From Ranitomeya imitator (Eukaryota), in the NCBI RefSeq assembly GCF_032444005.1, contig NC_091286.1:278256001-278320000 (forward strand): 64,000 nt of DNA. Direction: 5' to 3'. Below, one piece after another: positions 11,301 through 32,106 of this stretch. The translations under genes were made by a program, and so were the position numbers. Position 1 is the stretch's first letter, and each line of letters begins with the position of its first letter. The notes below the pieces were generated by a model. That model was not told the DNA's origin. It was given only the letters and a program-made list of their open reading frames with translations, and made no database searches.

Positions 11301-12577
11301 CAAACAAAAAAACTAAACACACCGTGAAAAAACTAGGGTGGGGAGGAGGACATTCCTTATATGATACCTAGGCTTGAAGCTGCCTGACAGCGGGGGTTGG
11401 CGCCCTAGGGGGAACGTTGTGGCGCCCCCGCTCAACGGCGGCTGGCCCGGGGGTCCCTAGAACGACCCTAGTATTCCCAAAGGGTCCCTCTACCCACACA
11501 GTGATGTACTAAAGGTACCCCTGTAAGCTATACATATAGCAACCTGAACCTAGGGAAACTTCAAACCCCACACCTGTGTATTAAAAACAATGAGAGAACA
11601 TGCATTTTCACACTTAATATGTGACTATTCTAGTATAACCTTACTTAAACAGATGATACTGTAATTGCCTCTATCAGCACTGTGGGGTGCACACACCAGC
11701 AGATGTCCACCATACCACATTCAGTCCAGTGTTATAATGAACACTTTTAGGACCAGATTTAATGTCCACCACCAGTCTGATGTCATACATATACTACCAA
11801 CTGAGACTCATGTATGTAATAAACCTGTGTCTCATACAGCCATGTCAAATTCCAGCCGGAATGCATTTCAAAGATAAAAGCACATGTACTCATCGTATAG
11901 TGAGGTGCCGTCCGCCTACTGTTCCTAAGTAGCCTCAACGCGTTTTGCCTCTCTGGCTCATCAGGAGGCTCGATTAATGATCATTTGTCTCGATGGTGCA
12001 GGATATATAAAAATCGCGATGTGATTTACCTCAATTTAACACAGCGCTGCTGTGTGACACGCAGATCCAGAGTGTGTTCCACTGTGTGCAGCCGCAAGGA
12101 TAGGCATTCGGTTCTACTAGTTAGAGATGAGCGCCTATTCTACTTCCGGATGCTACACAGGAAGTCCATCCTGGCGTCCTTTTCTGGCGGGTTCTGATTT
12201 AAATTGAGGTAAATCACATCGCGATTTTTATATATCATGCACCATCGAGAGTGCAAAAGTAGCTTTGAGAAGCAATGATTAGCTGATGATATAACGTAGT
12301 CACCCCGCAGTCCTGATCTGCATCTACTGTGAAGGCACAATCTACAAACATCATCAGCATGCTGCTCTTTAGCTATGTGCTGCTATGTAATTCTCTGCCC
12401 TGCTGTCTCTATGACCAACCATGCTGTTTAGTGCTCTGCCTTGGCTTCTTGCTTTATCATCCGTCTGCTCTGCCATAGTCTTCCTCTATCTCCTGTGTTC
12501 TGCAGTCAACATAGTGATTCCCCTCAGACATGCATATTCTAGAATACCCGATGCGTTAGAATCGGGCCACAATCTAG

Positions 12578-13140
12578 TATATAGATAATGTAGCCCCTCC
12601 ATAGAATACAATGTAGCCCTCCTCATATAGTATAATGCAGCCCCCATAGAATATAATGTAGCCCACTCAGAGTATAATGAAGCCCCCATACAATATAATC
12701 TAGCCCCCATAGAATATAATGCAGCCCCCCATAAAATATAATGCAACCCCTTAGAGTATAATGAAGTCCTGCATACAATATAATCTAGGCCCCATAGAAT
12801 ATAATACAGCCCCCATAGAATACAATGTAGCCCCCTCATGTAGTATAATGTAGCCCCCTATGCAATCACCCTTCATAGAATATATGAATATAATACAGCC
12901 CCCATAGAATATAATGTAGCCTCCCATAGAATTTAATACAGCCCACCTCCCATAGAATATAATGTAGCCTCCCATAGAATTTAATACAGCCCACCTCCCA
13001 TAGAATATAATGTAGCCCCCATAGAATATAATACATACCACCTCCCCATAGAATATAATGTACTCCCCATAGAATATAATACAGCCCACCTCCCCATAGA
13101 ATATAATACAGCCCCCCATAGAATATAATGTAGCCCCCCC
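12578..13140. repeat. Minisatellite (about 20-24 bp; ccccatagaatataatgtagc), left-arm copy
   Basis: Tandem degenerate units, the reverse complement of 24742-25353. Confidence 0.9.
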
Positions 13141-15543
13141 GAGAATGGCCCCACAGTACTCACTGATGTATTAAAAAAACACAATCCTCACCTCTCCTCA
13201 TGCCCCACGCTGCTCCAGGCTCTGCTCCAGTCTCAACAGCAGCACACAGTGGGCGATCGATTAAGTAACGTCATTGCACACCCGCAGTGTCAGAGACAGG
13301 GGAATGATGGGAGAGGGAGCATCATCTGACGCTCTCTCCTCCATCATGGCTTTGAATGCAGCAGCGGTGCGAGGGGTCGAGTTGGCGCTGGCGGCAGGCG
13401 GGCCCCCCTGACTCAGGGGCCCCATAGCGGCTGCGTGATGTGCAGCTATGAACGGCACGCCACTGGCTGGGGGACCCTGGTGGAGCCGGCCCTGTGCATA
13501 AAAAGACAATAGCAGCGTGCAGCGAGTGCTCCACAAATCAGACCATATGCACCTATAAAAGTCTATGAGTGCATGTAAGACTTCAGACTGCACTCAGATG
13601 TTATCAGAGTGCAGTCTGATATATGCACACAAAGACAATGGAGAAGATGGAGAAATTAAGCTCTCTGCCTTCTCTGCACCTGTGATATCATTCTCTCATG
13701 TGAGAGAATCGATCACAGGGAACTGACACTCTGCTTAACCAATGATGAGAGTTTGTGTCGAGTGCACTGTAATTAGGATAATCATCGCAGTTCTCTCGCA
13801 TGAGAAAATATATACTAGTATGAGCGACCCCTATTACAGAACGCAGTGGTCCTTGGCTAGCAATCACAGTGACGTTATCACTCTTGGTATCATTCATTTT
13901 TTTATATCACTTTTTTTTCATTTCTTTTTTACTTTTATTACATTGGAGGTTTGTTTGCTGTGCAGTGTGTGACTGGTGTGGAGGTGCATTAAAAAAAACT
14001 TACCAGTGATGTAGTGTTGTCTCTATGGGAAGGAACACTTCTCCTGGGTGGCAGCACAGCTACTGTACTGTTTCCTGACAGGCACTGCTGTGCAACGTGA
14101 GGACAACGTCAGCGGTCAGGAGTCACATAGGAAGGTCCTGCCGCTGAACAGCAGCTGCCAGCCCACCTCACAGTATAAATGATAATACAGAAGCCAGCTG
14201 TAGGAGTGAGGATGGATAGCCATAGCAGAACAGGAGAAGATGCAGAGTGCAGGTCTGGTAAGTATGACACGCCTGAGTGCTCCTGCCTCCGGATCACCGC
14301 CGACATTACTATAAGTAGCACAAGGCAGTGCAGTGCCGGGGAAAGGCTTGCATTGCAGAACAGATAAGATGCACTTACATCTGTCTCTTCTGCAAAGCGA
14401 AGCACTGCCTTGTGCTATTTGGATTGTGCGCTCAATTGTGGAACCAGCAGGGGGCCCCAGGCAGCTGCCTGGTCTGCCTGCCCATAACGCCAGCCCTGAT
14501 GCTGTGAATAAGAAAGCCCTCGTCATTCACCTCTCCAGCTGCTGCCAGGTCCTCTGCACGTCCTGCATGTCATCCTCACTTGGTAGGCCTTAGACATTGT
14601 TGTGAAAACCCCTTTCCTGGGTAAGCTAATTTGGGATGAGATACAAGTGATCTCCAGATGTGCCACTGTTGGTCCAATTAATAGAGATGCATCAGAGACA
14701 AGAACACTCACAGACAGTATCTGTCAGTATACAAGAATAGTCTGGCTTCAGATCGCAAGCCACGGGTATCTTATCACCCCAACAGGAAGAAAAGAGGATG
14801 GCTTAATACGGTACGTTACTTAAAGAAAATATAAGCTTAGAAACACAGTACCATAAATCATGGCTTCTGCCAGCTCCAAGAACTAGCTAAAACTATCTCC
14901 CAGTGTAGCAACATATTTAAACAAAGCTTGCCAACACAGTGTTTCATTGCTTTTATGTATGAAACATATAAAGATAATTTAAACACAAAGTTATTAAAGA
15001 TATGCACTGTATATAGTGAGACAGCAATCATAGCTGAGAGTCATTATGTGTCCCCCTGGATGCACACAGAAGCCTATGAAACCCGCTGGAGTGCACTGTA
15101 ATCACAGCCGCACCTGTGGTTGCAATGCAAAAAAAAGAGTGTGGATTTGGTCAAACTATTTGGTCAAGTCAGATTTAAGAAATCCTGATATGGGCTTTTA
15201 TTTTTGAAGAGATCTGCAGGATTGATAGTGGGACGGATCTCTTGCTTCACTCCGGGTTTTGCGAGTAGCCCACGTCCACAATTCACATTAAAACTTTGAG
15301 TTGAAGTTTGGGTGTGTCATTGTTTGGTTTTGCAAGCTTGAGAGCAGGAGCTTTCTGCAGTACGCGTCTGTGTGAAACTAAACACAGGCCAGAGCCAGAG
15401 GAAACAAACACAGGAGTCTGCCCACGGCAACGGTCGTTGCCTTTTACCGCACTGTGTGAACACATCTGCATTACGATACATATATATATTACGATACATT
15501 ACGATACGATGCATTACGATACATATATATATATATATATATA

Positions 15544-16970
15544 CAGTACAGACCAAAAGTTTGGACACACCTTCTCATTTTAACATTTTTCTGTATTTTC
15601 ATGACTATGAAAATTGTAAATTCACACTGAAGGCATCAAAACTATGAATTAACACATGTGGAATTATATACTTAACAAAAAAGTGTGAAACAACTGAAAA
15701 TATGTCTTATATTCTAGGTTCTTCAAAGTAGCCACCTTTTGCTTTGATGACTGCTTTGCACACTCTTGGCATTCTCTTGATGAGCTTCAAGTGGTAGTCG
15801 CCGGGAATGGTCTTCCAACAATCTTGAAGGAGTTCTCAGAGATGCTTAGCACTTGTTGGCCCTTTTGCCTTCACTCTGTGGTCCAGCTCACCCCAAACCA
15901 TCTCGATTGGGTTCAGGTCTAATGACTGTGGAGGCCAGGTCATCTGGCGTAGCACCCCATCACTCTCCTTCTTGGTCAAATAGCCCTTACACAGCCTGGA
16001 GGAGTGTTTGGGGTCATTGTCCTGTTGAAAAATAAATGATGGTCCAACTAAACGCAAAGCGGATGAAATGGAGTGGTAGCCATGCTGGTTCAGTATGCCT
16101 TCAATTTTGAATAAGTCCCCAACAGTGTCACCAGCAAAGCACCCCCACACTATCACACCTCCTCCTCCATGCTTCACGGTGGGAACCAGGCATGTAGAGT
16201 ACATCCGTTCACCTTTTCTGTGTTGCACAAAGACACGGTGGTTGGAACCAAAGATCTCAAATTTGGACTCATCTGACCAAACACAGATTTCAACTGGTCT
16301 AATGTCCATTGCTTGTGTTCTTTAGCCCAAACAAGTCTCTTCTGCTTGTTGCCTGTCCTTAGCAGTGGTTTCCTAGCAGCTATTTTACCATGAAGGCCTG
16401 CTGCACAAAGTCAACTCTTAACAGTTGTTGTAGAGATGTGTCTGCTGCTAGAACTCTTTGTGGCATTGACCTGGTCTCTAATCTGAGCTGCTGTTAACCT
16501 GCGATTTCTGAGGCTGGGAACTCGGATAAACTTATCGTCAGAAGCAGAGGTGACTCTTGGTCTTCCTTTCCTGGGGCGGTCCTCATGTGAGCCAGTTTCT
16601 TTGTAGCGCTTGATGGTTTTTGCAACTGCACTTGGGGACACTTTCAAAGTTTTCCCAATTTTTTGGACTGACTGACCTTTATTTCTTAAAGTAATGATGG
16701 CCATGCATCTTTCTTTACTTAGCTGCTTTTTTCTTGCCATAATACAAATTCTAACAGTCTATTCAGTAGGACTATCAGCTGTGTATCCACCAGACTTCTG
16801 CTCAACACAACTGATGGTCCCAACCCCAATTATAAAGCAAGAAATCCCACTTATTAAACCTGACAGGGCACACTTTTGAAGTGAAAAACATTTCTGGTGA
16901 CTACCTCTTGAAGCTCATCAAGAGAATGCTAAGAGTGGGCAAAGCAGTCATCAAGGCAAAAGGTAGCTAC
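15544..16970 (-). mobile_element. Tc1 element with broken transposase, left-arm copy
   Basis: (TA)n|cagtacagaccaaaagtttggacac TIR at 15544. ORFs 16411..16740 (HTH) and 15836..16309 ([20 protein letters not shown]). The other long TIR is truncated at about 16970. Confidence 0.9.
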
Positions 16971-17149
16971 TAGTTAAAACCTACAAGAGAAAAAAGTAAA
17001 TGAAAACCCTGATGTAGCTAAGTAAAAAAGCAAAAGTGCATTTAAATAATACAGAGTTTTTAGTAATACTGTTTTTTGATCAAAAAATAGCACAAAAGCC
17101 ATCCCACCTCGTCACGGTAACTCTGATCGGGACAGTCCTACACTGTCTA

Positions 17150-17510
17150 CTAATGTTGAGCATTCCGATACTGCAAATATCGGGTATCAGACGATATTTG
17201 CTGTATCGGAATTCTGATACCGAGTTCCGATATTTTTGAGATATCGGAAATCGGAATCGGAAGTTCCTATAAGTTCCCAGTCATCTTCGGCGTGTGCGGT
17301 GCATATGGTTCCCAGGGTCTGGAGGAGAGGAGACTCTCCTTAAGGCCCTGGGATCCATATTCATGTAAAAAATAAAGAATAAAAATAAAAAATATGGATA
17401 TACTCACCCCTCCGGCAAACCCTGGCTGTCACCACTGCAAGCGTCTGCCTCCATTCCTAAGAATGCAGTGGGTGAAGGACCTTCAATGACATCACGGTCA
17501 CACCTACCGA
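17150..17510. mobile_element. hAT-type MITE fragment, left-arm copy (right-arm copy about 20372-20732)
   Basis: taatgttgagcattccgatac terminus and tatcgg/ccgata subterminal repeats. Confidence 0.5.
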
Positions 17511-18727
17511 TCTCCTCCAGATCTTTCAGTTTTCAGGACTGTCATTGGGCAACATTGAGTTTCATCTCCCTTCAAAGATTTTCTGTTGGGTTCAGGTCTG
17601 GACACTGGCTAGGCCACTACATGACCTTGAAATGCTTCTTACAAAGCCACTCCTTAGTCACCCTGGCTGTGTGTTTAGGGTCATTGTTATACTGGAAGAC
17701 CTAGCCACTACCCATCTTCAATGCTCCTACTGAGGGAAGTTGGCTAAAATCTCTCGATACATGATCCAATCCATCCTCCCTTCCATATCATGCAGTCATA
17801 CTGTCCCCTTTGCAGAAAAGCATCCCCAAAGTATTATGTTTCCCCTCCATGCTTAAAGATTGGGATGGTGTACTGTGGGTTATACTCATCCTTCTTCTTC
17901 CTCCAAACACGGCGAGTAGAGTTGATACCAAAAGGTTCAATTTTGGTCTCATCTGAGCACATGACCTCTCTAATGCCTCCTCTGTATCATCCAGATGGTC
18001 ATTGGCCAACTTCAAACAGGCATGGAGTTGTGCTTGCGTGAGCAGAAGAATCTTGCATGCCCTTCAGGATTTTATTCTATGATGGCGCAGTGTGTTACAA
18101 ACAGTAATGCTTGAGACTGTGATCCCAGCTCTCTTCTGGTCATTGATCAGATCCTCCTCTGTAGTTATGGGCTGATTCCTGACCTATCTCAGAATTATCA
18201 GAATTCCACGAGGCAAATGGAGCTCCAGACCAAGGAAGACTGACAGTCATCTTGTGCTTCTTACTTATTATAATAATTTTGCCACCAGCTGTTGTCTTCT
18301 CGCTAAGCTGCTTGCCTATTGCCCTATAACCCATCCCAGCCTTGTGCAAGTCTACAATTTCTCCATCGTGTCCTTAGACAGCTCTTCGGTCTTGGCCATG
18401 GAGGAGAGGTTGGAGTGTGATTGAAAGACAGGTGTCTTTCATACAGGTAACGAGTTCAAACAGGTGCAATATCCAGGTAATGAGTGCAGAGTAGGAGGGC
18501 TCCTTAATGAGAAACTAACAGGTCTGTGAGAGCCAGAATTCTTTCCGGCTGGAAGGTGATCAAATACTTATTTCATGCAATTTCAATATTTAAAAATTAT
18601 ATAATGTGATTTTTTGCGTTGTATTTTTAGATTCTGTCTCTCACAGGTGAAGTGTACCTACGATAAAAATTACAGACCTCTCCATTCTCTGTAAATTGTA
18701 AAACTTGTAAAATCATCAGTGTATCAA
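17510..18727 (-). mobile_element. Degenerate Tc1, left-arm copy lacking the terminal 19 bp of its TIR
   Basis: Mirror of 19155-20372. It ends ...catcagtgtatcaa and then joins the hairpin. Confidence 0.85.
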
Positions 18728-18840
18728 TTCACAATGGTGGTGGCCCCCAGCAGTTTGATCCTAGGTGTTATACATTTACTATATGCCCTGTGTGTATAAC
18801 ACCTAGGATCAAACTGCTGGGGGCCACCACCATTGTGAAT
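18727..18840. repeat. Perfect 48-bp inverted repeat with 18-nt loop
   Basis: attcacaatggtggtggcccccagcagtttgatcctaggtgttataca (18727-18774) and its exact reverse complement (18793-18840). Confidence 0.95.
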
Positions 18841-19135
18841 GAAGCAGTAGTGCATATGCATGACCACCGCGCCATTCTCATTGTCTATGGAAGCGGCAGT
18901 GATAAATGTACCCTTTCCCTCAATTACCATCTTTTTTTTTTCTTCATCTTGTTGTCCTGTTACATAAGTTAAAGCAAAATATTCCCAATGGCAATTTTAG
19001 ACTGATAGGTCTAAAAATAATAGTGCAGTAGTCTTCTTAGGAAAGCAGAATTGTATCCTTAGATCTGTAGTAAAAAGTGACATAAAGAATGAAAGGCAAG
19101 ATACATAAAAAGGTTTACTGGATAGTAATGTAATG

Positions 19136-20372
19136 CAGTGGGGAAAATAAGTATTTGATACACTGATGATTTTACAAGTTTTACAATTTACAGAGAATGG
19201 AGAGGTCTGTAATTTTTATCGTAGGTACACTTCACCTGTGAGAGACAGAATCTAAAAATACAACGCAAAAAATCACATTATATAATTTTTAAATATTGAA
19301 ATTGCATGAAATAAGTATTTGATCACCTTCCAGCCGGAAAGAATTCTGGCTCTCACAGACCTGTTAGTTTCTCATTAAGGAGCCCTCCTACTCTGCACTC
19401 ATTACCTGGATATTGCACCTGTTTGAACTCGTTACCTGTATGAAAGACACCTGTCTTTCAATCACACTCCAACCTCTCCTCCATGGCCAAGACCGAAGAG
19501 CTGTCTAAGGACACGATGGAGAAATTGTAGACTTGCACAAGGCTGGGATGGGTTATAGGGCAATAGGCAAGCAGCTTAGCGAGAAGACAACAGCTGGTGG
19601 CAAAATTATTATAATAAGTAAGAAGCACAAGATGACTGTCAGTCTTCCTTGGTCTGGAGCTCCATTTGCCTCGTGGAATTCTGATAATTCTGAGATAGGT
19701 CAGGAATCAGCCCATAACTACAGAGGAGGATCTGATCAATGACCAGAAGAGAGCTGGGATCACAGTCTCAAGCATTACTGTTTGTAACACACTGCGCCAT
19801 CATAGAATAAAATCCTGAAGGGCATGCAAGATTCTTCTGCTCACGCAAGCACAACTCCATGCCTGTTTGAAGTTGGCCAATGACCATCTGGATGATACAG
19901 AGGAGGCATTAGAGAGGTCATGTGCTCAGATGAGACCAAAATTGAACCTTTTGGTATCAACTCTACTCGCCGTGTTTGGAGGAAGAAGAAGGATGAGTAT
20001 AACCCACAGTACACCATCCCAATCTTTAAGCATGGAGGGGAAACATAATACTTTGGGGATGCTTTTCTGCAAAGGGGACAGTATGACTGCATGATATGGA
20101 AGGGAGGATGGATTGGATCATGTATCGAGAGATTTTAGCCAACTTCCCTCAGTAGGAGCATTGAAGATGGGTAGTGGCTAGGTCTTCCAGTATAACAATG
20201 ACCCTAAACACACAGCCAGGGTGACTAAGGAGTGGCTTTGTAAGAAGCATTTCAAGGTCATGTAGTGGCCTAGCCAGTGTCCAGACCTGAACCCAACAGA
20301 AAATCTTTGAAGGGAGATGAAACTCAATGTTGCCCAATGACAGTCCTGAAAACTGAAAGATCTGGAGGAGAT
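19136..20372 (+). mobile_element. Degenerate Tc1 with complete 5' TIR, right-arm copy
   Basis: cagtggggaaaataagtatttgatacac at 19136; atggccaagaccgaagagctgtctaagg start at 19483; the transposase is frameshifted. Confidence 0.85.
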
Positions 20373-20911
20373 CGGTAGGTGTGACCGTGATGTCATTGAA
20401 GGTCCTTCACCCACTGCATTCTTAGGAATGGAGGCAGACGCTTGCAGTGGTGACAGCCAGGGTTTGCCGGAGGGGTGAGTATATCCATATTTTTTATTTT
20501 TATTCTTTATTTTTTACATGAATATGGATCCCAGGGCCTTAAGGAGAGTCTCCTCTCCTCCAGACCCTGGGAACCATATGCACCGCACACGCCGAAGATG
20601 ACTGGGAACTTATAGGAACTTCCGATTCCGATTTCCGATATCTCAAAAATATCGGAACTCGGTATCAGAATTCCGATACAGCAAATATCGTCTGATACCC
20701 GATATTTGCAGTATCGGAATGCTCAACATTAGTAGACAGTGTAGGACTGTCCCGATCAGAGTTACCGTGACGAGGTGGGATGGCTTTTGTGCTATTTTTT
20801 GATCAAAAAACAGTATTACTAAAAACTCTGTATTATTTAAATGCACTTTTGCTTTTTTACTTAGCTACATCAGGGTTTTCATTTACTTTTTTCTCTTGTA
20901 GGTTTTAACTA

Positions 20912-22338
20912 GTAGCTACCTTTTGCCTTGATGACTGCTTTGCCCACTCTTAGCATTCTCTTGATGAGCTTCAAGAGGTAGTCACCAGAAATGTTTTTCA
21001 CTTCAAAAGTGTGCCCTGTCAGGTTTAATAAGTGGGATTTCTTGCTTTATAATTGGGGTTGGGACCATCAGTTGTGTTGAGCAGAAGTCTGGTGGATACA
21101 CAGCTGATAGTCCTACTGAATAGACTGTTAGAATTTGTATTATGGCAAGAAAAAAGCAGCTAAGTAAAGAAAGATGCATGGCCATCATTACTTTAAGAAA
21201 TAAAGGTCAGTCAGTCCAAAAAATTGGGAAAACTTTGAAAGTGTCCCCAAGTGCAGTTGCAAAAACCATCAAGCGCTACAAAGAAACTGGCTCACATGAG
21301 GACCGCCCCAGGAAAGGAAGACCAAGAGTCACCTCTGCTTCTGACGATAAGTTTATCCGAGTTCCCAGCCTCAGAAATCGCAGGTTAACAGCAGCTCAGA
21401 TTAGAGACCAGGTCAATGCCACAAAGAGTTCTAGCAGCAGACACATCTCTACAACAACTGTTAAGAGTTGACTTTGTGCAGCAGGCCTTCATGGTAAAAT
21501 AGCTGCTAGGAAACCACTGCTAAGGACAGGCAACAAGCAGAAGAGACTTGTTTGGGCTAAAGAACACAAGCAATGGACATTAGACCAGTTGAAATCTGTG
21601 TTTGGTCAGATGAGTCCAAATTTGAGATCTTTGGTTCCAACCACCGTGTCTTTGTGCAACACAGAAAAGGTGAACGGATGTACTCTACATGCCTGGTTCC
21701 CACCGTGAAGCATGGAGGAGGAGGTGTGATAGTGTGGGGGTGCTTTGCTGGTGACACTGTTGGGGACTTATTCAAAATTGAAGGCATACTGAACCAGCAT
21801 GGCTACCACTCCATTTCATCCGCTTTGCGTTTAGTTGGACCATCATTTATTTTTCAACAGGACAATGACCCCAAACACTCCTCCAGGCTGTGTAAGGGCT
21901 ATTTGACCAAGAAGGAGAGTGATGGGGTGCTACGCCAGATGACCTGGCCTCCACAGTCATTAGACCTGAACCCAATCGAGATGGTTTGGGGTGAGCTGGA
22001 CCACAGAGTGAAGGCAAAAGGGCCAACAAGTGCTAAGCATCTCTGAGAACTCCTTCAAGATTGTTGGAAGACCATTCCCGGCGACTACCACTTGAAGCTC
22101 ATCAAGAGAATGCCAAGAGTGTGCAAAGCAGTCATCAAAGCAAAAGGTGGCTACTTTGAAGAACCTAGAATATAAGACATATTTTCAGTTGTTTCACACT
22201 TTTTTGTTAAGTATATAATTCCACATGTGTTAATTCATAGTTTTGATGCCTTCAGTGTGAATTTACAATTTTCATAGTCATGAAAATACAGAAAAATGTT
22301 AAAATGAGAAGGTGTGTCCAAACTTTTGGTCTGTACTG
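20912..22338 (+). mobile_element. Tc1 element with broken transposase, right-arm copy
   Basis: ORFs 21142..21471 and 21573..22046; TIR ends ggtctgtactg|(TA)n at 22338. Confidence 0.9.
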
Positions 22339-24741
22339 TATATATATATATATATATATGTATCGTAATGCATCGTATCGTAATGTATCGTAATATATAT
22401 ATGTATCGTAATGCAGATGTGTTCACACAGTGCGGTAAAAGGCAACGACCGTTGCCGTGGGCAGACTCCTGTGTTTGTTTCCTCTGGCTCTGGCCTGTGT
22501 TTAGTTTCACACAGACGCGTACTGCAGAAAGCTCCTGCTCTCAAGCTTGCAAAACCAAACAATGACACACCCAAACTTCAACTCAAAGTTTTAATGTGAA
22601 TTGTGGACGTGGGCTACTCGCAAAACCCGGAGTGAAGCAAGAGATCCGTCCCACTATCAATCCTGCAGATCTCTTCAAAAATAAAAGCCCATATCAGGAT
22701 TTCTTAAATCTGACTTGACCAAATAGTTTGACCAAATCCACACTCTTTTTTTTGCATTGCAACCACAGGTGCGGCTGTGATTACAGTGCACTCCAGCGGG
22801 TTTCATAGGCTTCTGTGTGCATCCAGGGGGACACATAATGACTCTCAGCTATGATTGCTGTCTCACTATATACAGTGCATATCTTTAATAACTTTGTGTT
22901 TAAATTATCTTTATATGTTTCATACATAAAAGCAATGAAACACTGTGTTGGCAAGCTTTGTTTAAATATGTTGCTACACTGGGAGATAGTTTTAGCTAGT
23001 TCTTGGAGCTGGCAGAAGCCATGATTTATGGTACTGTGTTTCTAAGCTTATATTTTCTTTAAGTAACGTACCGTATTAAGCCATCCTCTTTTCTTCCTGT
23101 TGGGGTGATAAGATACCCGTGGCTTGCGATCTGAAGCCAGACTATTCTTGTATACTGACAGATACTGTCTGTGAGTGTTCTTGTCTCTGATGCATCTCTA
23201 TTAATTGGACCAACAGTGGCACATCTGGAGATCACTTGTATCTCATCCCAAATTAGCTTACCCAGGAAAGGGGTTTTCACAACAATGTCTAAGGCCTACC
23301 AAGTGAGGATGACATGCAGGACGTGCAGAGGACCTGGCAGCAGCTGGAGAGGTGAATGACGAGGGCTTTCTTATTCACAGCATCAGGGCTGGCGTTATGG
23401 GCAGGCAGACCAGGCAGCTGCCTGGGGCCCCCTGCTGGTTCCACAATTGAGCGCACAATCCAAATAGCACAAGGCAGTGCTTCGCTTTGCAGAAGAGACA
23501 GATGTAAGTGCATCTTATCTGTTCTGCAATGCAAGCCTTTCCCCGGCACTGCACTGCCTTGTGCTACTTATAGTAATGTCGGCGGTGATCCGGAGGCAGG
23601 AGCACTCAGGCGTGTCATACTTACCAGACCTGCACTCTGCATCTTCTCCTGTTCTGCTATGGCTATCCATCCTCACTCCTACAGCTGGCTTCTGTATTAT
23701 CATTTATACTGTGAGGTGGGCTGGCAGCTGCTGTTCAGCGGCAGGACCTTCCTATGTGACTCCTGACCGCTGACGTTGTCCTCACGTTGCACAGCAGTGC
23801 CTGTCAGGAAACAGTACAGTAGCTGTGCTGCCACCCAGGAGAAGTGTTCCTTCCCATAGAGACAACACTACATCACTGGTAAGTTTTTTTTAATGCACCT
23901 CCACACCAGTCACACACTGCACAGCAAACAAACCTCCAATGTAATAAAAGTAAAAAAGAAATGAAAAAAAAGTGATATAAAAAAATGAATGATACCAAGA
24001 GTGATAACGTCACTGTGATTGCTAGCCAAGGACCACTGCGTTCTGTAATAGGGGTCGCTCATACTAGTATATATTTTCTCATGCGAGAGAACTGCGATGA
24101 TTATCCTAATTACAGTGCACTCGACACAAACTCTCATCATTGGTTAAGCAGAGTGTCAGTTCCCTGTGATCGATTCTCTCACATGAGAGAATGATATCAC
24201 AGGTGCAGAGAAGGCAGAGAGCTTAATTTCTCCATCTTCTCCATTGTCTTTGTGTGCATATATCAGACTGCACTCTGATAACATCTGAGTGCAGTCTGAA
24301 GTCTTACATGCACTCATAGACTTTTATAGGTGCATATGGTCTGATTTGTGGAGCACTCGCTGCACGCTGCTATTGTCTTTTTATGCACAGGGCCGGCTCC
24401 ACCAGGGTCCCCCAGCCAGTGGCGTGCCGTTCATAGCTGCACATCACGCAGCCGCTATGGGGCCCCTGAGTCAGGGGGGCCCGCCTGCCGCCAGCGCCAA
24501 CTCGACCCCTCGCACCGCTGCTGCATTCAAAGCCATGATGGAGGAGAGAGCGTCAGATGATGCTCCCTCTCCCATCATTCCCCTGTCTCTGACACTGCGG
24601 GTGTGCAATGACGTTACTTAATCGATCGCCCACTGTGTGCTGCTGTTGAGACTGGAGCAGAGCCTGGAGCAGCGTGGGGCATGAGGAGAGGTGAGGATTG
24701 TGTTTTTTTAATACATCAGTGAGTACTGTGGGGCCATTCTC

Positions 24742-25353
24742 GGGGGGGCTACATTATATTCTATGGGGGGCTGTATTATATTCTATGGGGAGGTGGGCTG
24801 TATTATATTCTATGGGGAGTACATTATATTCTATGGGGAGGTGGTATGTATTATATTCTATGGGGGCTACATTATATTCTATGGGAAGGTGGGCTGTATT
24901 ATATTCTATGGGCGGCTACATTATATTCTATGGGAGGTGGGCTGTATTAAATTCTATGGGAGGCTACATTATATTCTATGGGAGGTGGGCTGTATTAAAT
25001 TCTATGGGAGGCTACATTATATTCTATGGGGGCTGTATTATATTCATATATTCTATGAAGGGTGATTGCATAGGGGGCTACATTATACTACATGAGGGGG
25101 CTACATTGTATTCTATGGGGGCTGTATTATATTCTATGGGGCCTAGATTATATTGTATGCAGGACTTCATTATACTCTAAGGGGTTGCATTATATTTTAT
25201 GGGGGGCTGCATTATATTCTATGGGGGCTAGATTATATTGTATGGGGGCTTCATTATACTCTGAGTGGGCTACATTATATTCTATGGGGGCTGCATTATA
25301 CTATATGAGGAGGGCTACATTGTATTCTATGGAGGGGCTACATTATCTATATA
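24742..25353. repeat. Minisatellite (gggggctgcattatattctat-type), continuing at 27060-27176 and 32866-33830
   Basis: The same G-rich strand orientation holds on both sides of the Helitron array and the Gypsy insertion, so it is one interrupted tract. Confidence 0.9.
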
Positions 25354-27058
25354 CTAGATTGTGGCCCGATTCTAACGCATCGGGTATTCTAGAATATGCA
25401 TGTCCCCGTAGTATATGGACAATGATGATTCCAGAATTCGCAGCACACTGTGCCCGTCGCTGATTGGTCGAGGCAACCTTTATGACATCATCGTCGCCAT
25501 GGCAACCATTATGACATCTACGTCGATACTGTGCCCGTCGCTGAATCAGAAACGTGAGATGTCTACGTCCTTTATGACATCATCGTCGCTGTGCCCGTTG
25601 CTGATTGGTTGAGGCCTGGCGGCCTCAACCAATCAGAGACGCGGGATTTCTACGTCGATGCTGTGCCGGCCTCGACCAATCAGAGAGCCGGGATTTCCAG
25701 GACAGACAGACAGACAGACAGACAGATGGAAAAACCCTTAGACAATTATATATGTACTAGATTGTGGCCCGATTCTAACGCATCGGGTATTCTAGAATAT
25801 GCATGTCCCCATAGTATATGGACAATGATGATTCCAGAATTCGCGGCACACTGTGCCTGTCACTGATTGGTCGAGGCAACCTTTATGACATCATCGTCGC
25901 CATGGCAACCATTATGATATCTACGTCGATACTGTGCCCGTCGCTGAATCAGAAACATGAGATGTCTACGTCCTTTATGACATCATCGTCGCTGTGCCTG
26001 TTGCTGATTGGTCGAGGCCTGGCGGCCTCGACCAATCAGAGACCGGCACAGCATCGACGAAGAAATCCCGCCTGGCGGCCTCGACCAATCAGCAACAGGC
26101 ACAGCGACGATGATGTCATAAAGGACGTAGACATCTCATGTTTCTGATTCAGCGACGGGCACAGTATCGACGTAGATGTCATAATGGTTGCCATGGCGAC
26201 GATGATGTCATAAAGGTTGCCTCGACCAATCAGCGACAGGCACAGTGTGCCGCGAATTCTGGAATCATCATTGTCCATATACTATGGGGACATGCATATT
26301 CTAGAATACCCGATACGTTAGAATCGGGCCACAATCTAGTATAGATATAATTGTCTAAGGGTTTTTTCCGTCTGTCTGTCTTTCGGTCTGTCTGTCTTTC
26401 TGTCTGTCTGTCTGTCCTGGAAATCCCGCGTCTCTGATTGGTCGAGGCCGCCAGGCCTCGACCAATCAGCGACGGGCACAGCGACGATGATGTCATAAGG
26501 GATGTAGAAATCCCACGTTTGATTGGTCGAGGTCGCCAGGCCTCGACCAATCAGCAACGGGCACAGCGACGATGATGTCATAAGGGACGTAGAAATCCCA
26601 CGTTTGATTGGTCGAGGTCGCCAGGCCTCGACCAATCAGCAACGGGCACAGCGACGATGATGTCATAAGGGATGTAGAAATCCCACGTTTGATTGGTTGA
26701 GGTCGCCAGGCCTCGACCAATCAGCAACGGGCACAGCGACGATGATGTCATAAAGGACGTAGACATCCCGCGTCTCTGATTGGTCGAGGTCGCCAGGCCT
26801 TGACCAATCAGCAATGGGCACAGCGACGATGATGTCATAAAGGACGTAGAAATCCCACGTTTCTGATTCAGCGACGGGCACAGTATCGATGGAGATGTCA
26901 TAATGGTTGCCATGGCGACGATGATGTCATAAAGGTTGCCTTGACCAATCAGCGAGGGGCACAGTCTGCCGCAAATTCTGGAATCATCATTGTCCATATA
27001 CTACGGGGACATGCATATTCTAGAATACCCGATGCGTTAGAATCGGGCCACAATCTAG
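25354..27058. mobile_element. Four-unit non-autonomous Helitron concatemer arranged -,-,+,+
   Basis: The 3' terminus CCCGAT-gcgttaga-ATCGGG-ccacaat-CTAG occurs at 25354(-), 25757(-), 26339(+) and 27058(+). 5'-type ends carry tataattgtctaaggg and a (GTCT)n microsatellite. Flanks are A (25353) and T (27059) with no TSD. Confidence 0.8.
26450..26880 (+). repeat. 85-bp tandem repeat (about 5 copies) inside Helitron unit 4
   Basis: gcgacgatgatgtcata recurs at 26481, 26566, 26651, 26736 and 26823. Confidence 0.9.
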
Positions 27059-27176
27059 TACTATATAAGGGGGCTATTCTATGGAGGGGCTGCATTATAT
27101 TCTGTGGGGGCTGCATTATACTCTATGAGGGGACTACCATATATTCTATGGAACGGCTATGCTATATGAGGGGGCT

Positions 27177-27924
27177 TGTTATGGCTGGCAATCAGGCAAC
27201 ACAGCGTGCAGTAATCAGCGCACATACAGAGATCTGGCAATAACCAAAAACAATAGGACGAGCTCTGAGACGTGGAATCTCTGTAGACTGCAGTACCTGA
27301 TCTATCCTCACACAACTATAAGCAGCAGTGGATTGCGCCTATCACTACCTATGCAACTCGGCACCGCCTGAGGAGCTGACTAGCCTGAAGATAGAAATAC
27401 AAGCCTGACTTACCTCAGAGAAATACCCCAAAGGAATAGGCAGCCCCCCACATATAATGACTGTTAGCAAGATGAAAAGACAAACGGAGGAATGAAATAG
27501 ATTCAGCAAAGTGAGGCCCGATATTCTAGACAGAGCGAGGATAGCAAAGAGAACTATGCAGTCTACAAAAAACCCTAAAACGAAAACCACGCAAAGGGGC
27601 AAAAAGACCCACCGTGCCGAACTAACAGCACGGCGGTGCACCCCTTTGCTTCTCAGAGCTTCCAGCAAAAGTTAATAGCAAGCTGGACAGAAAAAACAGA
27701 AAACAAACTAGAAGCACTTATCTAGCAGAGCAGCAGGCCCAAGGAAAGATGCAGTAGCTCAGATCCAACACTGGAACATTGACAAGGAGCAAGGAAGACA
27801 GACTCAGGTGGAGCTAAATAGCAAGGCAGCCAACGAGCTCACCAAAACACCTGAGGGAGGAAGCCCAGAGACTGCAATACCACTTGTGACCACAGAAGTG
27901 AACTCAGCCACAGAATTCACAACA
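27177..27924 (-). repeat. 3' LTR of the Gypsy element
   Basis: Direct repeat of 32118-32865; ORF-track translations of the two LTRs are identical. Confidence 0.95.
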
Positions 27925-30900
27925 GTACCCCCCCCTTGAGGAGGGGTCACCGAACCCTCACCAGAACCCCCAGGCCGACCAGGATGAGCCACATGAAAGG
28001 CACGAACAAGATCTGGGGCATGGACATCAGAGGCAAAAACCCAGGTATTATCTTCCTGAGCATAACCCTTCCATTTGACCAGATACTGGAGTTTCCGTCT
28101 AGAGACACGAGAATCCAAAATCTTCTCCACAATATACTCCAATTCCCCCTCCACCAAAACAGGGGCAGGAGGCTCCACAGATGGAACCATAGGTGCCACG
28201 TATCTCCTCAACAACGACCTATGGAATACATTATGTATGGAAAAGGAGTCTGGGAGGGTCAGACGAAAAGACACCGGATTGAGAATCTCAGAAATCCTAT
28301 ACGGACCAATAAAACGAGGTTTAAATTTAGGAGAGGAAACCTTCATAGGAATATGACGAGAAGATAACCAAACCAGATCCCCAACACGAAGTCGGGGTCC
28401 CACACGGCGTCTGCGATTAGCGAAAAGCTGAGCCTTCTCCTGGGACAAGGTCAAATTGTCCACTACCTGAGTCCAGATCTGCTGCAACCTGTCCACCACA
28501 GAATCCACACCAGGACAGTCCGAAGACTCAACCTGTCCTGAAGAGAAACGAGGATGGAACCCAGAATTGCAGAAAAATGGAGAGACCAAGGTAGCCGAGC
28601 TGGCCCGATTATTAAGGGCGAACTCAGCCAACGGCAAAAATGACACCCAATCATCCTGGTCAGCGGAAACAAAACATCTCAGATATGTTTCCAAGGTCTG
28701 ATTGGTTCGTTCGGTCTGGCCATTAGTCTGAGGATGGAAGGCCGAGGAGAAAGATAGGTCAATGCCCATCCTACCACAAAAGGCTCGCCAGAACCTCGAG
28801 ACAAACTGGGAACCTCTGTCAGAAACAATATTCTCAGGAATGCCATGTAAACGAACCACATGCTGGAAGAACAAAGGCACCAAATCAGAGGAGGAAGGCA
28901 ATTTAACCAAGGGCACCAGATGGACCATTTTAGAAAAGCGATCACAGACCACCCAAATGACCGACATTTTTTGAGAAACGGGAAGGTCAGAAATGAAATC
29001 CATCGAAATATGTGTCCAAGGCCTCTTCGGGACCGGCAAGGGCAAAAGCAACCCACTGGCACGTGAACAGCAGGGCTTAGCCCTAGCACAAATTCCACAG
29101 GACTGCACAAAAGCACACACATCCCGTGACAGAGATGGCCACCAGAAGGATCTAGCAACCAACTCCCTGGTACCAAAGATTCCTGGATGACCGGCCAGCA
29201 CCGAACAATGAAGTTCAGAGATAACTTTACTAGTCCACCTATCAGGGACGAACAGTTTCTCGGTCGGACAACGATCAGGTTTATTAGCCTGAAATTTCTG
29301 CAACACTCTCCGCAAATCAGGGGTAATGGCAGACACAATGACTCCTTCCTTGAGGATACTCGCCGGCTCAGATAACCCCGGAGAGTCGGGCACAAAACTC
29401 CTAGACAGAGCATCCGCCTTCACATTTTTAGAGCCCGGAAGGTATGAAATCACAAAATCAAAACGAGCAAAAAATAACGACCAACGGGCCTGTCTAGGAT
29501 TCAAGCGCTTGGCAGACTCAAGATAAGTAAGGTTCTTATGATCAGTCAAAACCACCACGCGATGCTTAGCACCCTCAAGCCAATGACGCCACTCCTCGAA
29601 TGCCCACTTCATGGCCAGCAACTCTCGGTTGCCCACATCATAATTACGCTCAGCAGCAGAAAATTTCCTGGAAAAGAAAGCACATGGTTTGAACACTGAG
29701 CAACCAGAACCTCTCTGTGACAAAACCGCCCCATCACCAATCTCAGAAGCATCAACCTCGACCTGGAACGGAAGAGAAACATCAGGTTGACACAACACAG
29801 GGGCACAGCAAAAACGACGCTTCAACTCCTGAAAAGCTTCCACGGCAGCAGAAGACCAATTAACCAAATCAGCACCCTTCTTGGTCAAATCGGTCAATGG
29901 TCTGGCAATGCTAGAAAAATTACAGATGAAGCGACGATAAAAATTAGCAAAGCCCAGGAATTTCTGCAGACTTTTTAGAGATGTCGGCTGAGTCCAATCC
30001 TGGATGGCCTGAACCTTAACCGGATCCATCTCGATAGTAGAAGGGGAAAAGATGAACCCCAAAAATGAAACTTTCTGCACACCGAAGAGACACTTTGATC
30101 CCTTCACGAACAAGGAATTAGCACGCAGTACCTGGAAAACCATTCTGACTTGCTTCACATGAGACTCCCAATCATCTGAGAAGATCAAAATGTCATCCAA
30201 GTAAACAATCAAGAATTTATCCAGATACTCACGGAAAATGTCATGCATAAAAGACTGAAAAACAGATGGAGCATTGGCAAGTCCGAACGGCATCACCAGA
30301 TACTCAAAATGACCCTCGGGCGTATTAAATGCCGTTTTCCATTCATCTCCCTGCCTGATTCTCACCAGATTATACGCACCACGAAGATCAATCTTAGTAA
30401 ACCAACTAGCCCCCTTAATCCGAGCAAACAAGTCAGAAATCAATGGCAAGGGATACTGAAACTTAACAGTGATCTTATTAAGAAGGCGGTAATCAATACA
30501 CGGTCTTAGCGAACCATCCTTCTTGGCTACAAAAAAGAACCCTGCTCCCAATGGTGACGACGATGGGCGAATATGTCCCTTCTCCAGGGACTCCTTCACA
30601 TAACTGCGCATAGCGGTGTGTTCAGGTACGGACAAATTAAATAAACGACCCTTAGGGAATTTACTACCAGGAATCAAATCGATAGCACAATCACAATTCC
30701 TATGCGGAGGTAGGGCATCAGACTTGGACTCTTCAAATACATCCTGAAAGTCCGACAAGAACTCTGGGATGTCAGAAGGAATGGATGACGAAATAGACAA
30801 AAATGGAACATCACCATGTACTCCCTGACAACCCCAGCTGGTTACCGACATAGAGTTCCAATCCAATACTGGATTATGGGTTTGTAGCCATGGCAACCCC

Positions 30901-32099
30901 AACACGACCACATCATGCAAATTATGCAGTACCAGAAAGCGAATAACTTCCTGATGTGCAGGAGCCATGCACATGGTCAGCTGGGCCCAGTACTGAGGCT
31001 TATTCTTGGCCAAAGGTGTAGCATCAATTCCTCTCAACGGAATAGGACACCGCAAAGGCTCCAAGAAAAATCCACAACGTTTAGCATAATCCAAATCCAT
31101 CAGATTCAGGGCAGCGCCTGAATCCACAAACGCCATGACAGAATACGATGACAAAGAGCACATTAAGGTAATGGACAAAAGGAATTTGGACTGTACAGTA
31201 CCAATAACGGCAGAGCTATCGAACCGCCTAGTGCGTTTAGGACAATTAGAAATAGCATGAGTAGAATCACCACAATAGAAACACAGTCTGTTCAGACGTC
31301 TGTGTTCTTGCCGTTCTACTTTAGTCATAGTCCTGTCGCACTGCATAGGCTCAGGTTTACTCTCAGACAATACCGCCAGATGGTGCACAGATTTACGCTC
31401 GCGCAAGCGACGACCGATCTGAATGGCCAAGGACATAGACTCATTCAAACCAGCAGGCATAGGAAATCCCACCATTACATCCTTAAGAGCTTCAGAGAGA
31501 CACTTTCTGAACAAAGCCGCTAGTGCAGATTCATTCCACAGAGTGAGTACTGACCACTTCCTAAATTTCTGACAATATACTTCTACATCATCCTGACCCT
31601 GGCATAAAGCCAGCAGATTTTTCTCAGCCTGATCCACTGAATTAGGCTCATCGTAAAGCAATCCCAGCGCCTGGAAAAATGCATCAACATTACTCAATGC
31701 AGAATCTCCTGGTGCAAGAGAAAACGCCCAGTCCTGTGGGTTGCCGCGCAAAAAAGAAATAATAATCAAAACCTGTTGAATAGGATTACCAGAAGAATGA
31801 GGTTTCAAGGCCAAAAATAGCTTACAATTATTTCTGAAGCTCAGGAACTTAGTTCTGTCACCAAAAAACAAATCAGGAATCGGAATTCTTGGTTCTAGCA
31901 TCGATTTCTGATCAATAGTATCTTGAATCTTTTGTACATTTACAACGAGATTATCCATTGAGGAGCACAGAGCCTGAATATCCATGTCCACAGCTGTGTC
32001 CTGAAGCACTCTAATGTCTAGGGGAAAAAAAAGACTGAAGACAGAGCTAAGAAAAAAAAATGATGTCAGGATTTCTTTTTTCCCTCTATTGGGAATCAT
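27804..32099 (-). CDS. Gag-Pol polyprotein (gag, CCHC knuckle, protease, RT, RNase H, integrase, chromodomain)
   Basis: CFYCGDSTHAISNC; FVDSGA; YLDDILIF; DAS and TDHKNL; HHCC plus D-D-E (SMDFI, VSDRG, GQTER); GPY; chromodomain EYIVEKILD...YLVKWKGY. The first ATG is at 32099 (the track start at 32132 is a TTG in the LTR); an alternative ATG is at 31985. Confidence 0.95.
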   Translation of the reverse strand: MIPNRGKKEILTSFFFLSSVFSLFFPLDIRVLQDTAVDMDIQALCSSMDNLVVNVQKIQDTIDQKSMLEPRIPIPDLFFGDRTKFLSFRNNCKLFLALKPHSSGNPIQQVLIIISFLRGNPQDWAFSLAPGDSALSNVDAFFQALGLLYDEPNSVDQAEKNLLALCQGQDDVEVYCQKFRKWSVLTLWNESALAALFRKCLSEALKDVMVGFPMPAGLNESMSLAIQIGRRLRERKSVHHLAVLSESKPEPMQCDRTMTKVERQEHRRLNRLCFYCGDSTHAISNCPKRTRRFDSSAVIGTVQSKFLLSITLMCSLSSYSVMAFVDSGAALNLMDLDYAKRCGFFLEPLRCPIPLRGIDATPLAKNKPQYWAQLTMCMAPAHQEVIRFLVLHNLHDVVVLGLPWLQTHNPVLDWNSMSVTSWGCQGVHGDVPFLSISSSIPSDIPEFLSDFQDVFEESKSDALPPHRNCDCAIDLIPGSKFPKGRLFNLSVPEHTAMRSYVKESLEKGHIRPSSSPLGAGFFFVAKKDGSLRPCIDYRLLNKITVKFQYPLPLISDLFARIKGASWFTKIDLRGAYNLVRIRQGDEWKTAFNTPEGHFEYLVMPFGLANAPSVFQSFMHDIFREYLDKFLIVYLDDILIFSDDWESHVKQVRMVFQVLRANSLFVKGSKCLFGVQKVSFLGFIFSPSTIEMDPVKVQAIQDWTQPTSLKSLQKFLGFANFYRRFICNFSSIARPLTDLTKKGADLVNWSSAAVEAFQELKRRFCCAPVLCQPDVSLPFQVEVDASEIGDGAVLSQRGSGCSVFKPCAFFSRKFSAAERNYDVGNRELLAMKWAFEEWRHWLEGAKHRVVVLTDHKNLTYLESAKRLNPRQARWSLFFARFDFVISYLPGSKNVKADALSRSFVPDSPGLSEPASILKEGVIVSAITPDLRRVLQKFQANKPDRCPTEKLFVPDRWTSKVISELHCSVLAGHPGIFGTRELVARSFWWPSLSRDVCAFVQSCGICARAKPCCSRASGLLLPLPVPKRPWTHISMDFISDLPVSQKMSVIWVVCDRFSKMVHLVPLVKLPSSSDLVPLFFQHVVRLHGIPENIVSDRGSQFVSRFWRAFCGRMGIDLSFSSAFHPQTNGQTERTNQTLETYLRCFVSADQDDWVSFLPLAEFALNNRASSATLVSPFFCNSGFHPRFSSGQVESSDCPGVDSVVDRLQQIWTQVVDNLTLSQEKAQLFANRRRRVGPRLRVGDLVWLSSRHIPMKVSSPKFKPRFIGPYRISEILNPVSFRLTLPDSFSIHNVFHRSLLRRYVAPMVPSVEPPAPVLVEGELEYIVEKILDSRVSRRKLQYLVKWKGYAQEDNTWVFASDVHAPDLVRAFHVAHPGRPGGSGEGSVTPPQGGGTVVNSVAEFTSVVTSGIAVSGLPPSGVLVSSLAALLFSST

Positions 32100-32106
32100 T
32101 GGTGTG

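What the first reader, a model, noticed from the sequence alone, without database searches (positions are those of the whole stretch)
12527..25404. 12.9-kb near-perfect palindrome with breakpoints inside a Helitron 3' end and a Tc1 TIR
Seen: two 6.2-kb inverted arms, apparently identical apart from one 49-bp minisatellite block, separated by only 427 bp. The right arm is continuous with downstream structures (complete Tc1 TIR, full Helitron, continuing minisatellite), so the left arm is the derived copy. That copy starts 51 bp inside a Helitron 3' terminus (including the hairpin and CTAG) and runs through 6.15 kb of flank to stop 19 bp short of a Tc1 end. Established: long palindromes with short spacers are generally unstable, and Helitrons can capture 3' flank by terminator read-through. 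Inference: either a Helitron-associated 3' transduction placed locally in inverted orientation, or a replication template switch at structured TE termini. The empty site would read ...cctca|ttcac..., an A|T junction as at Helitron targets, but this is weak evidence.
Basis: partly seen in the sequence, partly recalled or inferred. Interest (0 to 1): 0.9.

Follow-up and report, generated by a model that had tools for sequence, protein, structure and literature searches.

The report
Young 12.9-kb palindrome, reality unproven
The assembly does contain a 12.9-kb palindrome with error-free arms, but the only deeply sequenced sample of this species carries a version of the site without it. It is therefore either a very recent, not-yet-fixed copying accident of DNA replication or an assembly or library artefact, and nothing supports a Helitron origin.

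Summary
The arms 12527-18727 and 19155-25404 are inverted copies with no substitution. They differ only by one 49-nt minisatellite unit.

Window 12527-18774 is the exact reverse complement of [18793-18840]+[19156-25404]. The true centre is therefore the 18-nt loop, and the left arm lacks a 315-nt block (18841-19155).

The "Helitron" is the end of a 1.7-kb composite palindromic repeat. The window holds no Rep/helicase ORF, and the copy has neither a Helitron 5' end nor a new 3' terminator.

Public reads came from one sample of the same species label, as de Bruijn contigs. A 721-nt contig at single-copy depth runs through the stem, which a perfect hairpin would not allow. No contig covers 18728-18774. 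Only 6 of 10 sampled words around the outer junction are held, as expected if the flank is present and the junction absent. A palindrome-free allele therefore exists.

The verdict is a near tie: a very young, non-fixed inverted duplication made by serial template switching (0.45), or an assembly/library artefact (0.40). Long reads would decide.

Unchecked scan notes report a palindrome of similar size elsewhere in this genome.

The parts
12527..18726 (-). Left arm: inverted copy of 19156-25404, with no substitutions and one minisatellite unit (49 nt) fewer
18727..18774 (-). Left stem: perfect inverted copy of 18793-18840, joined to the left arm with a 1-nt overlap. It belongs to the duplicated material.
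18775..18792 (.). 18-nt single-copy loop, the true centre of the palindrome
   Evidence: covered by the 721-nt public contig in the depth table
18793..18840 (+). Right stem: the source copy, contiguous with the spacer in public contigs
18841..19155 (+). 315-nt block present only on the right side. It is unique DNA plus the first 20 nt of the Tc1-type inverted repeat, and it is missing from the left arm at a 1-nt (T) microhomology.
   Evidence: flat single-copy depth of 15.2 and 9 in X1 and X2
19136..20580 (+). Degenerate Tc1/Sleeping-Beauty-like transposon. Many genomic copies start at 19131-19134. It keeps an HTH_SB remnant at 19533-19742. The right end at about 20580 is approximate.
19156..25404 (+). 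Right arm: the source copy, a mosaic of high-copy transposons. It includes a second Tc1-like remnant (transposase pieces at 21142-22046) and ends in the minisatellite and 58 nt of the neighbouring repeat.
24746..25031 (+). Minisatellite block of period 48-49 nt: 5.9 copies here against 4.9 in the left arm (12900-13136). This is the only difference inside the arms.
25342..27065 (.). Composite palindromic repeat. Four ~300-nt units (two direct, two inverted, 94-97% alike) each end in hairpin+CTAG, with (GACA)n and 85-nt tandem repeats. The outer breakpoint of the palindrome (25404|25405) lies 58 nt inside it.
12237..12526 (+). Unique left flank, abutting the left arm at 12526|12527 with no microhomology. 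Its last two bases (CA) repeat at the end of the left stem.

Best explanation
Window 12527-18774 (6,248 nt) is an inverted copy of the DNA lying just downstream, put in at a single point about 18 nt from the start of its own source.

The most coherent way to make it is one low-fidelity replication or repair episode of the fold-back / microhomology-mediated break-induced replication (MMBIR) type. A growing strand leaves its template at the end of the left flank (12526). It restarts on the opposite strand about 6.6 kb ahead (25404), inside a hairpin-prone repeat end. It then copies back towards its origin, slips by one minisatellite unit, skips 315 nt at a 1-nt microhomology 20 nt inside a Tc1 inverted repeat, and copies 48 nt more. 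Finally it returns to the original template at a 2-nt (CA) microhomology.

The event is very young and not fixed, because an allele without it is present in the one deeply sequenced sample.

Shown: the anatomy, the junction sequences, and the existence of a hairpin-free allele. Inferred: the order of the switches, and that the structure exists in the animal at all.
For: - The copy is exact, with 0 substitutions in 6.2 kb, one repeat-unit slip and one 315-nt skip.
- Junctions carry 0, 1 and 2 nt of homology, as in replicative template-switch rearrangements.
- The inverted copy lies 18 nt from its own source, the geometry of fold-back events (fold-back priming and fill-in with a further template switch are described in PMC10622511).
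- Both outer breakpoints lie at structure-forming repeat ends.
- Neither novel junction lies in homologous sequence, so an overlap-based assembler could not create them by mis-joining repeats. They must stand inside reads.
- Fold-back artefact reads are reported as virtually absent from PacBio HiFi gDNA (PMC12870357). A simple fold-back read would also give no flank junction, no 315-nt skip and no repeat-unit difference.
- Other events at this locus are equally young: Ty3/gypsy LTRs are 749/749 identical.
- A palindrome-free allele in sample S1 fits a polymorphic or heterozygous insertion.
Against: - No read evidence for the structure was obtained. In X1 and X2 no contig covers 18728-18774, and high-copy pieces stop exactly at 18727.
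- Only 6 of 10 sampled words around 12526|12527 are held, the share expected if the flank is present and the junction absent.
- A 721-nt contig runs through the stem. In simulation that happens only when the hairpin is absent.
- If S1 is the assembled animal, a heterozygous palindrome needs three graph features to have been pruned from Logan's contigs in both runs.
- Unchecked scan notes list another palindrome of nearly the same size (about 6.56-kb arms, 283-bp spacer) in this genome. That hints at a size set by read or insert length.
Confidence: 0.45

Rival explanations
1. Assembly or library artefact. One or a few chimeric molecules were threaded into the consensus or used to patch the assembly, and polishing made the arms identical. 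Such molecules could come from in-vitro strand-displacement or snap-back synthesis, from amplification chimeras, or from a fold-back read joined to a second chimeric junction. The animal would carry only the palindrome-free allele.
For: - Both novel junctions are missing from the contigs of the only deep sample of this species label, while the flank and spacer are present at single-copy depth.
- The 721-nt contig is close to the 706 nt predicted for a hairpin-free allele, against 350 nt for the assembled structure whether homozygous or heterozygous.
- Amplification chimeras are typically nearby inverted copies, often several per molecule, and do enter assemblies as inverted duplications (PMC6218980).
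- ONT gDNA has about 0.6% fold-back reads (PMC12870357).
- The total length of 12.9 kb is about one long read. A second palindrome of about 13.4 kb is noted in the same genome (unchecked note).
Against: - Three non-homologous junctions plus a repeat-unit slip in one molecule is not the usual single-junction chimera of unamplified libraries.
- Assemblers normally discard paths supported by one read when normal coverage contradicts them.
- There is no gap (N) or contig end nearby (no N in the window).
- Logan contigs prune low-coverage branches next to high-copy repeats, so the absence of junction words is weak evidence.
- Sample S1 may be another individual.
Confidence: 0.4
2. Helitron-mediated 3' transduction. 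Read-through past the Helitron terminator captured 6.15 kb of flank, and the product re-inserted nearby in inverted orientation.
For: The motif 12527-12577 has a 6-bp-stem hairpin 11 nt before CTAG, followed by T, as at Helitron 3' ends.
Against: - Rolling-circle transposition starts at the 5' end. The copy has only the last 51 nt of the motif and no 5' terminus.
- The far end is not a CTRR/hairpin terminator but 1-2-nt microhomologies.
- There is no Rep/helicase ORF in 64 kb.
- The motif sits at the ends of nested inverted ~300-nt units, and similarity continues beyond CTAG in some copies, so even the Helitron identity is unproven.
- Landing 18 nt from the source's own start is unexplained by transposition.
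Confidence: 0.02
3. An older palindrome kept identical by arm-to-arm gene conversion, as in sex-chromosome palindromes.
For: The arms show 100% identity, and the differences are limited to indels, which conversion tolerates poorly.
Against: A palindrome-free allele exists in the species. An 18-nt loop makes a 6-kb palindrome highly unstable in established knowledge of long inverted repeats. The arms are ordinary transposon debris with no genes. No sign of age was found anywhere.
Confidence: 0.03

Closest known systems
Fold-back inversions / inverted duplications by fold-back priming with fill-in synthesis (yeast and cancer genomes; PMC10622511)
   Same: Inverted arms are separated by a short single-copy loop (18 nt here; 6-35 bp in the yeast cases). 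A tiny microhomology lies at the fold-back point. The copy extends away from the centre.
   Different: The classical product runs to the chromosome end and gives a dicentric. Here the copy stops after 6.2 kb and rejoins the original flank at the place it left, so at least two further switches are needed. No pre-existing short inverted repeat at the centre could be shown.
MMBIR/FoSTeS complex rearrangements (inverted duplications inserted in place, DUP-INV type; from established knowledge, not tested against a paper here)
   Same: Several template switches occur within a few kb. Junctions carry 0-2 nt of homology. There are small skips and repeat slippage inside the copied tract, and the net result is an insertion of nearby sequence in inverted orientation.
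   Different: Usually inferred in human disease loci and tumours. Here it would be a germline or polymorphic event in a wild amphibian-like genome, with breakpoints at transposon ends.
Artificial palindromes in long reads (WGA chimeras, PMC6218980; fold-back reads, PMC12870357)
   Same: The inverted copy comes from the same few kb, the arms are perfect, and the total size is that of one long read. Such reads can enter assemblies.
   Different: Simple fold-back reads are symmetric, have no flank junction and no internal skip. HiFi gDNA is reported as nearly free of them. Nothing indicates that this genome was amplified.
Helitron 3' read-through gene capture
   Same: A hairpin+CTAG motif lies at one end of the copied tract.
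   Different: There is no 5' end, no new terminator, no Rep/Hel, and the copy lies in inverted orientation 18 nt from its source.
Foldback-type / long-inverted-repeat transposable elements
   Same: The neighbouring 25342-27065 repeat has long inverted ends built of sub-repeats and TA at both borders.
   Different: It is only the site of the outer breakpoint. The 12.9-kb palindrome is a mosaic of unrelated transposons and flank, not an element.

Membership tests
Inverted duplication by fold-back / serial template switching | Two copies in inverted orientation, adjacent, with a short single-copy centre | tested here: met
   The arms are exact and the centre is 18 nt.
Inverted duplication by fold-back / serial template switching | Junctions with no or very short microhomology and no target-site duplication of a transposase type | tested here: met
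   The three junctions carry 0, 1 (T) and 2 (CA) nt of homology.
Inverted duplication by fold-back / serial template switching | The structure exists in genomic DNA: independent molecules span both novel junctions and the arms have raised copy number | tested here: not met
   In the Logan contigs of X1 and X2, depth is zero over 18728-18774, 6 of 10 words are held at the outer junction, and the contig runs through the stem. Contigs show presence, not absence, so this is not a refutation. Raw long reads were not available.
Inverted duplication by fold-back / serial template switching | An ancestral allele without the copy | tested here: met
   A 721-nt single-copy contig in X1 and X2 continues past 18793 into sequence that is not the left stem or arm. 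Simulation gives 706 nt for the flank|18775 allele and 350 nt for the assembled structure. That the contig continues into the left flank itself is inferred, not read.
Long-read fold-back / chimera artefact | Junctions supported by one or very few molecules while normal coverage contradicts them | not testable with these tools
   Only de Bruijn contigs of two runs were available, and both read-laying runs are used.
Long-read fold-back / chimera artefact | A symmetric palindrome about the read midpoint, with the breakpoints within about 200 bp on opposite strands (Breakinator definition, PMC12870357) | tested here: inconclusive
   The centre fits, with breakpoints 18 nt apart. But the left arm lacks 315 nt and one 49-nt unit and is joined to unique flank.
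Helitron (element) and Helitron 3' transduction | 5' TC terminus, 3' hairpin + CTRR, insertion between A and T, no terminal inverted repeats | tested here: inconclusive
   The 3' hairpin + CTAG + T is present in five copies. No 5' end was identified. The copies form nested inverted pairs of ~300 nt, and similarity continues past CTAG.
Helitron (element) and Helitron 3' transduction | A transduced copy begins at the element's 5' end and ends at a surrogate terminator | tested here: not met
   The copy begins 51 nt before CTAG and ends at microhomologies.
Helitron (element) and Helitron 3' transduction | Rep/helicase protein in an autonomous partner | tested here: not met
   There is none in the window. 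Of the four ORFs of 180 aa or more, one is a Ty3/gypsy pol, one is a Tc1 transposase and two have no Pfam hit. The rest of the genome could not be searched.
Tc1/mariner element at the inner breakpoint | Inverted repeat beginning CAGTG next to TA, many copies, and an HTH/DDE transposase | tested here: met
   Hundreds of contigs from four runs begin at 19131-19134. An HTH_SB remnant lies at 19533-19742. The second inverted repeat was not located exactly.

The most novel reading that the evidence does not exclude
The palindrome is real and was caught almost at birth. It would be a germline, still-polymorphic 6.2-kb inverted duplication in a wild amphibian-like genome, made in one replication episode with three template switches that can be read base by base. 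The switch points sit at hairpin-prone transposon ends, and the ancestral allele is still present in the same species. That would make it a natural specimen of how large palindromes start.
Probability: 0.4. Interest if true: 0.55.

Novelty: new member of a known kind. Interest (0 to 1): 0.3.

Why it matters
If real, the locus records every junction of a multi-switch inverted duplication before mutation or deletion has blurred it, together with its empty allele. It would help in studying how long palindromes arise and how long they survive in a vertebrate germline, and whether structured transposon ends act as switch points.

If it is an artefact, it flags a class of error in this assembly: read-length palindromes inside contigs, without gaps. 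That would affect other 'giant palindrome' notes from the same genome. In either case it is an instance of a known kind of rearrangement or a known kind of error, not a new mechanism.

Tried and rejected
1. Helitron transduction was rejected for the reasons given in the rival explanations.

2. It keeps the perfect hairpin, and in simulation the spacer unitig then stops at 18813 (348 nt), not the 721 nt observed.

3. I tried to recover the 721-nt contig's sequence through the look-up of encoding contigs, using three ORFs of the spacer. Nothing was on record.

4. I considered reading the 721-nt contig as itself palindromic. This was rejected because a k=31 de Bruijn contig cannot use the same canonical words twice, and its mean depth is single-copy.

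5. A retro-copy of a local transcript with the 315-nt skip as an intron was rejected. There are no GT..AG ends on either strand, and the 18-nt adjacency to the source stays unexplained.

6. Adapter remnants at the centre were rejected. From my knowledge of SMRTbell and ONT adapter sequences, the 18-nt loop and the stem do not resemble them, and the loop is covered by the public contig.

7. An Rfam scan of the window found no family.

8. The unit structure of the 'Helitron' region was resolved only to the level of four ~300-nt units. The family was not identified.

9. The piece table and depth table disagree by 18 nt (18793 against 18775) on where the contig leaves the window. I could not resolve whether the loop is inverted in that allele.

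10. The 15-nt excess of the observed contig over the simplest empty allele is unexplained.
Full report
**1. What is in the sequence**

The palindrome is there as described. The repeat finder gives arms 12996-18727 / 19155-24886 (5,732 nt) and 12527-13020 / 24911-25404 (494 nt), both 100% complementary. A direct comparison gives arm lengths of 6,201 and 6,250 nt with no substitution. The single difference is 49 nt inside a minisatellite of period 48-49 nt, which has 4.9 copies on the left and 5.9 on the right. There is no N in the window.

It is not. It begins with a perfect 48-nt inverted repeat, 18727-18774 / 18793-18840, around an 18-nt loop. As single-stranded DNA this folds at -61 kcal/mol, z = -17. 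Because the stem is as error-free as the arms and abuts the left arm with a 1-nt overlap, it belongs to the same duplication.

Window 12527-18774 (6,248 nt) equals the reverse complement of [18793-18840]+[19156-25404], minus one minisatellite unit, with no other difference. The structure is therefore a palindrome centred on an 18-nt loop. Its left arm lacks a 315-nt block (18841-19155) that the right side has. The block consists of unique DNA plus the first 20 nt of a Tc1-type inverted repeat.

**2. The surroundings**

- The inverted repeat that starts at 19136 is a true element end. Contigs of four runs from two species labels begin at 19131-19134 by the hundred. A Sleeping-Beauty-type HTH remnant follows at 19533-19742.
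- The arms, at least from 16.8 to 21.2 kb, are very high-copy transposon debris with word depths of 10^3 to 10^5. A second Tc1-like remnant lies at 21142-22046.
- The outer end of the right arm runs 58 nt into a 1.7-kb composite repeat (25342-27065). This repeat is built of four ~300-nt units, two direct and two inverted, 94-97% alike. Each unit ends in a small hairpin and CTAG. The repeat also carries (GACA)n and 85-nt tandem repeats.
- The composite repeat sits in a G-rich minisatellite. That minisatellite is also interrupted by a Ty3/gypsy element with an intact 1,442-aa ORF and LTRs that are 749/749 identical.
- The hairpin+CTAG+T does look like a Helitron 3' end. However, the window has no Rep/helicase ORF, no 5' end was identifiable, the motif sits at the ends of long inverted repeats, and similarity continues past CTAG in some copies. 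Helitron identity is unproven and is not needed for what follows.

**3. The junctions**

- Outer junction: ...TTCCCCTCA|GACATGC... shows no homology with the sequence that follows 25404 in the source.
- Skip of 315 nt: ...GTGAA(T)|TGATAC... has 1 nt of homology.
- Fold-back point: ...GTTATA(CA)|TTTACT... where the same CA ends the left flank, giving 2 nt of homology.
- There is no transposase-type target duplication, no terminator motif, and no GT..AG at the skip.

**4. Read evidence**

Only de Bruijn (k=31) contigs of public runs were available. X1 and X2 come from one sample, S1, of the same species label. They cover the unique spacer at a flat single-copy depth of 15.2 and 9.

- In both runs one 721-nt contig lies on 19160 down to 18793 and then continues for about 335-353 letters that do not lie on the left stem or the left arm. 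The depth table puts its coverage down to 18775.
- Depth over 18728-18774 is zero in all four runs. The high-copy pieces on the left stop exactly at 18727.
- A perfect 48-nt hairpin forces a branch in a k=31 graph. In my simulation the spacer unitig is 350 nt (18811-19160) for the assembled structure, whether homozygous or heterozygous. It is 706 nt (12207-12526 + 18775-19160) for a hairpin-free allele that joins the left flank to the loop.
- The observed 721 nt and the passage through the stem fit only a hairpin-free allele. The 15-nt excess and the orientation of the loop in that allele remain open.
- For the outer junction I queried 12437-12556, which holds 60 flank-only words and 30 junction-spanning words. 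X1 and X2 each hold 6 of the 10 sampled words. That is the share expected (0.67) if the flank is present and the junction is not.
- A related species label holds 4 of 10 words, so the flank is an ordinary conserved locus.

Sample S1 therefore carries an allele without the left arm, and its contigs show neither novel junction. Such contigs prune low-coverage branches next to high-copy repeats, so they prove presence only. I also could not learn whether S1 is the assembled animal.

**5. Mechanism**

If the structure is real, one low-fidelity replication or repair episode explains every feature.

1. The growing strand leaves the template at 12526.
2. It restarts on the opposite strand 6.6 kb ahead, at 25404, next to a 12-nt palindrome and a hairpin of the composite repeat.
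3. It copies back towards its origin and slips one minisatellite unit.
4. It skips 315 nt at a 1-nt homology, 20 nt inside the Tc1 inverted repeat.
5. It copies 48 nt more and returns to the original template 18 nt away at a CA homology.

This is the fold-back / MMBIR family of events. Fold-back priming with short loops, and the variant in which fill-in synthesis switches template again, are described in PMC10622511.

With no differences in 2 x 6.2 kb, and assuming about 1e-9 substitutions per site per year, the copy would be younger than roughly 10^5 years. That fits a non-fixed allele and the known instability of long palindromes with short loops. The age estimate is an inference.

**6. The artefact rival**

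The read evidence is what an artefact predicts, and the total length of 12.9 kb is that of one long read. Amplification chimeras are typically nearby inverted copies, often several per molecule, and are known to enter assemblies (PMC6218980). ONT gDNA has about 0.6% fold-back reads, whereas HiFi has virtually none (PMC12870357). Unchecked notes of this scan list another palindrome with ~6.56-kb arms and a 283-bp spacer in the same genome.

Several points count against the artefact. Three non-homologous junctions plus a repeat slip in one molecule is unusual for unamplified libraries. An overlap assembler cannot invent non-homologous junctions and normally drops single-read paths. No gap or contig end is nearby.

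I rate the two readings as nearly equal: real 0.45, artefact 0.40.

**7. Other readings**

- Helitron 3' transduction fails on its defining features: no 5' end, no surrogate terminator, and placement 18 nt from the source.
- An old palindrome homogenised by gene conversion is unlikely, given the palindrome-free allele and the 18-nt loop.

**8. Verdict**

This is an instance of a known kind of rearrangement or of a known kind of error. Its interest is modest until long reads settle which.

Noticed in passing
window 27177-32866: A very young Ty3/gypsy LTR retrotransposon. It has an intact 1,442-aa gag-pol ORF (27804-32132, minus strand; RT, RNase H, integrase, chromodomain) and LTRs 27177-27925 / 32118-32866 that are 749/749 identical. 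It is inserted in the G-rich minisatellite, with a probable GGGCT target duplication.
   Followed up: partly
window 25342-27065: A composite palindromic repeat of four ~300-nt units (two direct, two inverted). Each unit ends in hairpin+CTAG, and the repeat carries (GACA)n and 5 copies of an 85-nt tandem repeat rich in CCAATCAG. An inner 290-nt-arm palindrome (25730-26366, 98%, 57-nt spacer) extends beyond the CTAG ends. A smaller inverted duplication has therefore also happened at this locus, or the family is foldback-like.
   Followed up: partly
window 24736-25346, 27075-27150, 32866-33826 (and 12585-13146 in the left arm): A long minisatellite of 21-22-nt units (ATTCTATGGGGGGCTACATTAT) with higher-order 48-, 65- and 85-nt periods. 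It is interrupted by the composite repeat and by the gypsy element.
   Followed up: no
window 11989-12250: A MITE-like structure in the left flank: ~50-nt inverted ends (38 nt perfect, 12002-12039 / 12199-12236) around ~160 nt.
   Followed up: no
window 59865-60902: An intact 345-aa Tc1-type transposase ORF (HTH_Tnp_Tc3_2 + DDE_3), possibly an active copy.
   Followed up: no
window 12437-12526 and 18841-19130: Runs of a second species label (organism B) hold 4 of 10 words of the left flank but show no depth over the unique spacer. The two stretches may not be neighbours, or the spacer may be absent or diverged, in that relative.
   Followed up: no
window 18793-19160: The 721-nt public contig differs from the window by one letter over 368 nt, at a place the tool did not list. 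It therefore represents another haplotype or individual than the assembled sequence.
   Followed up: no
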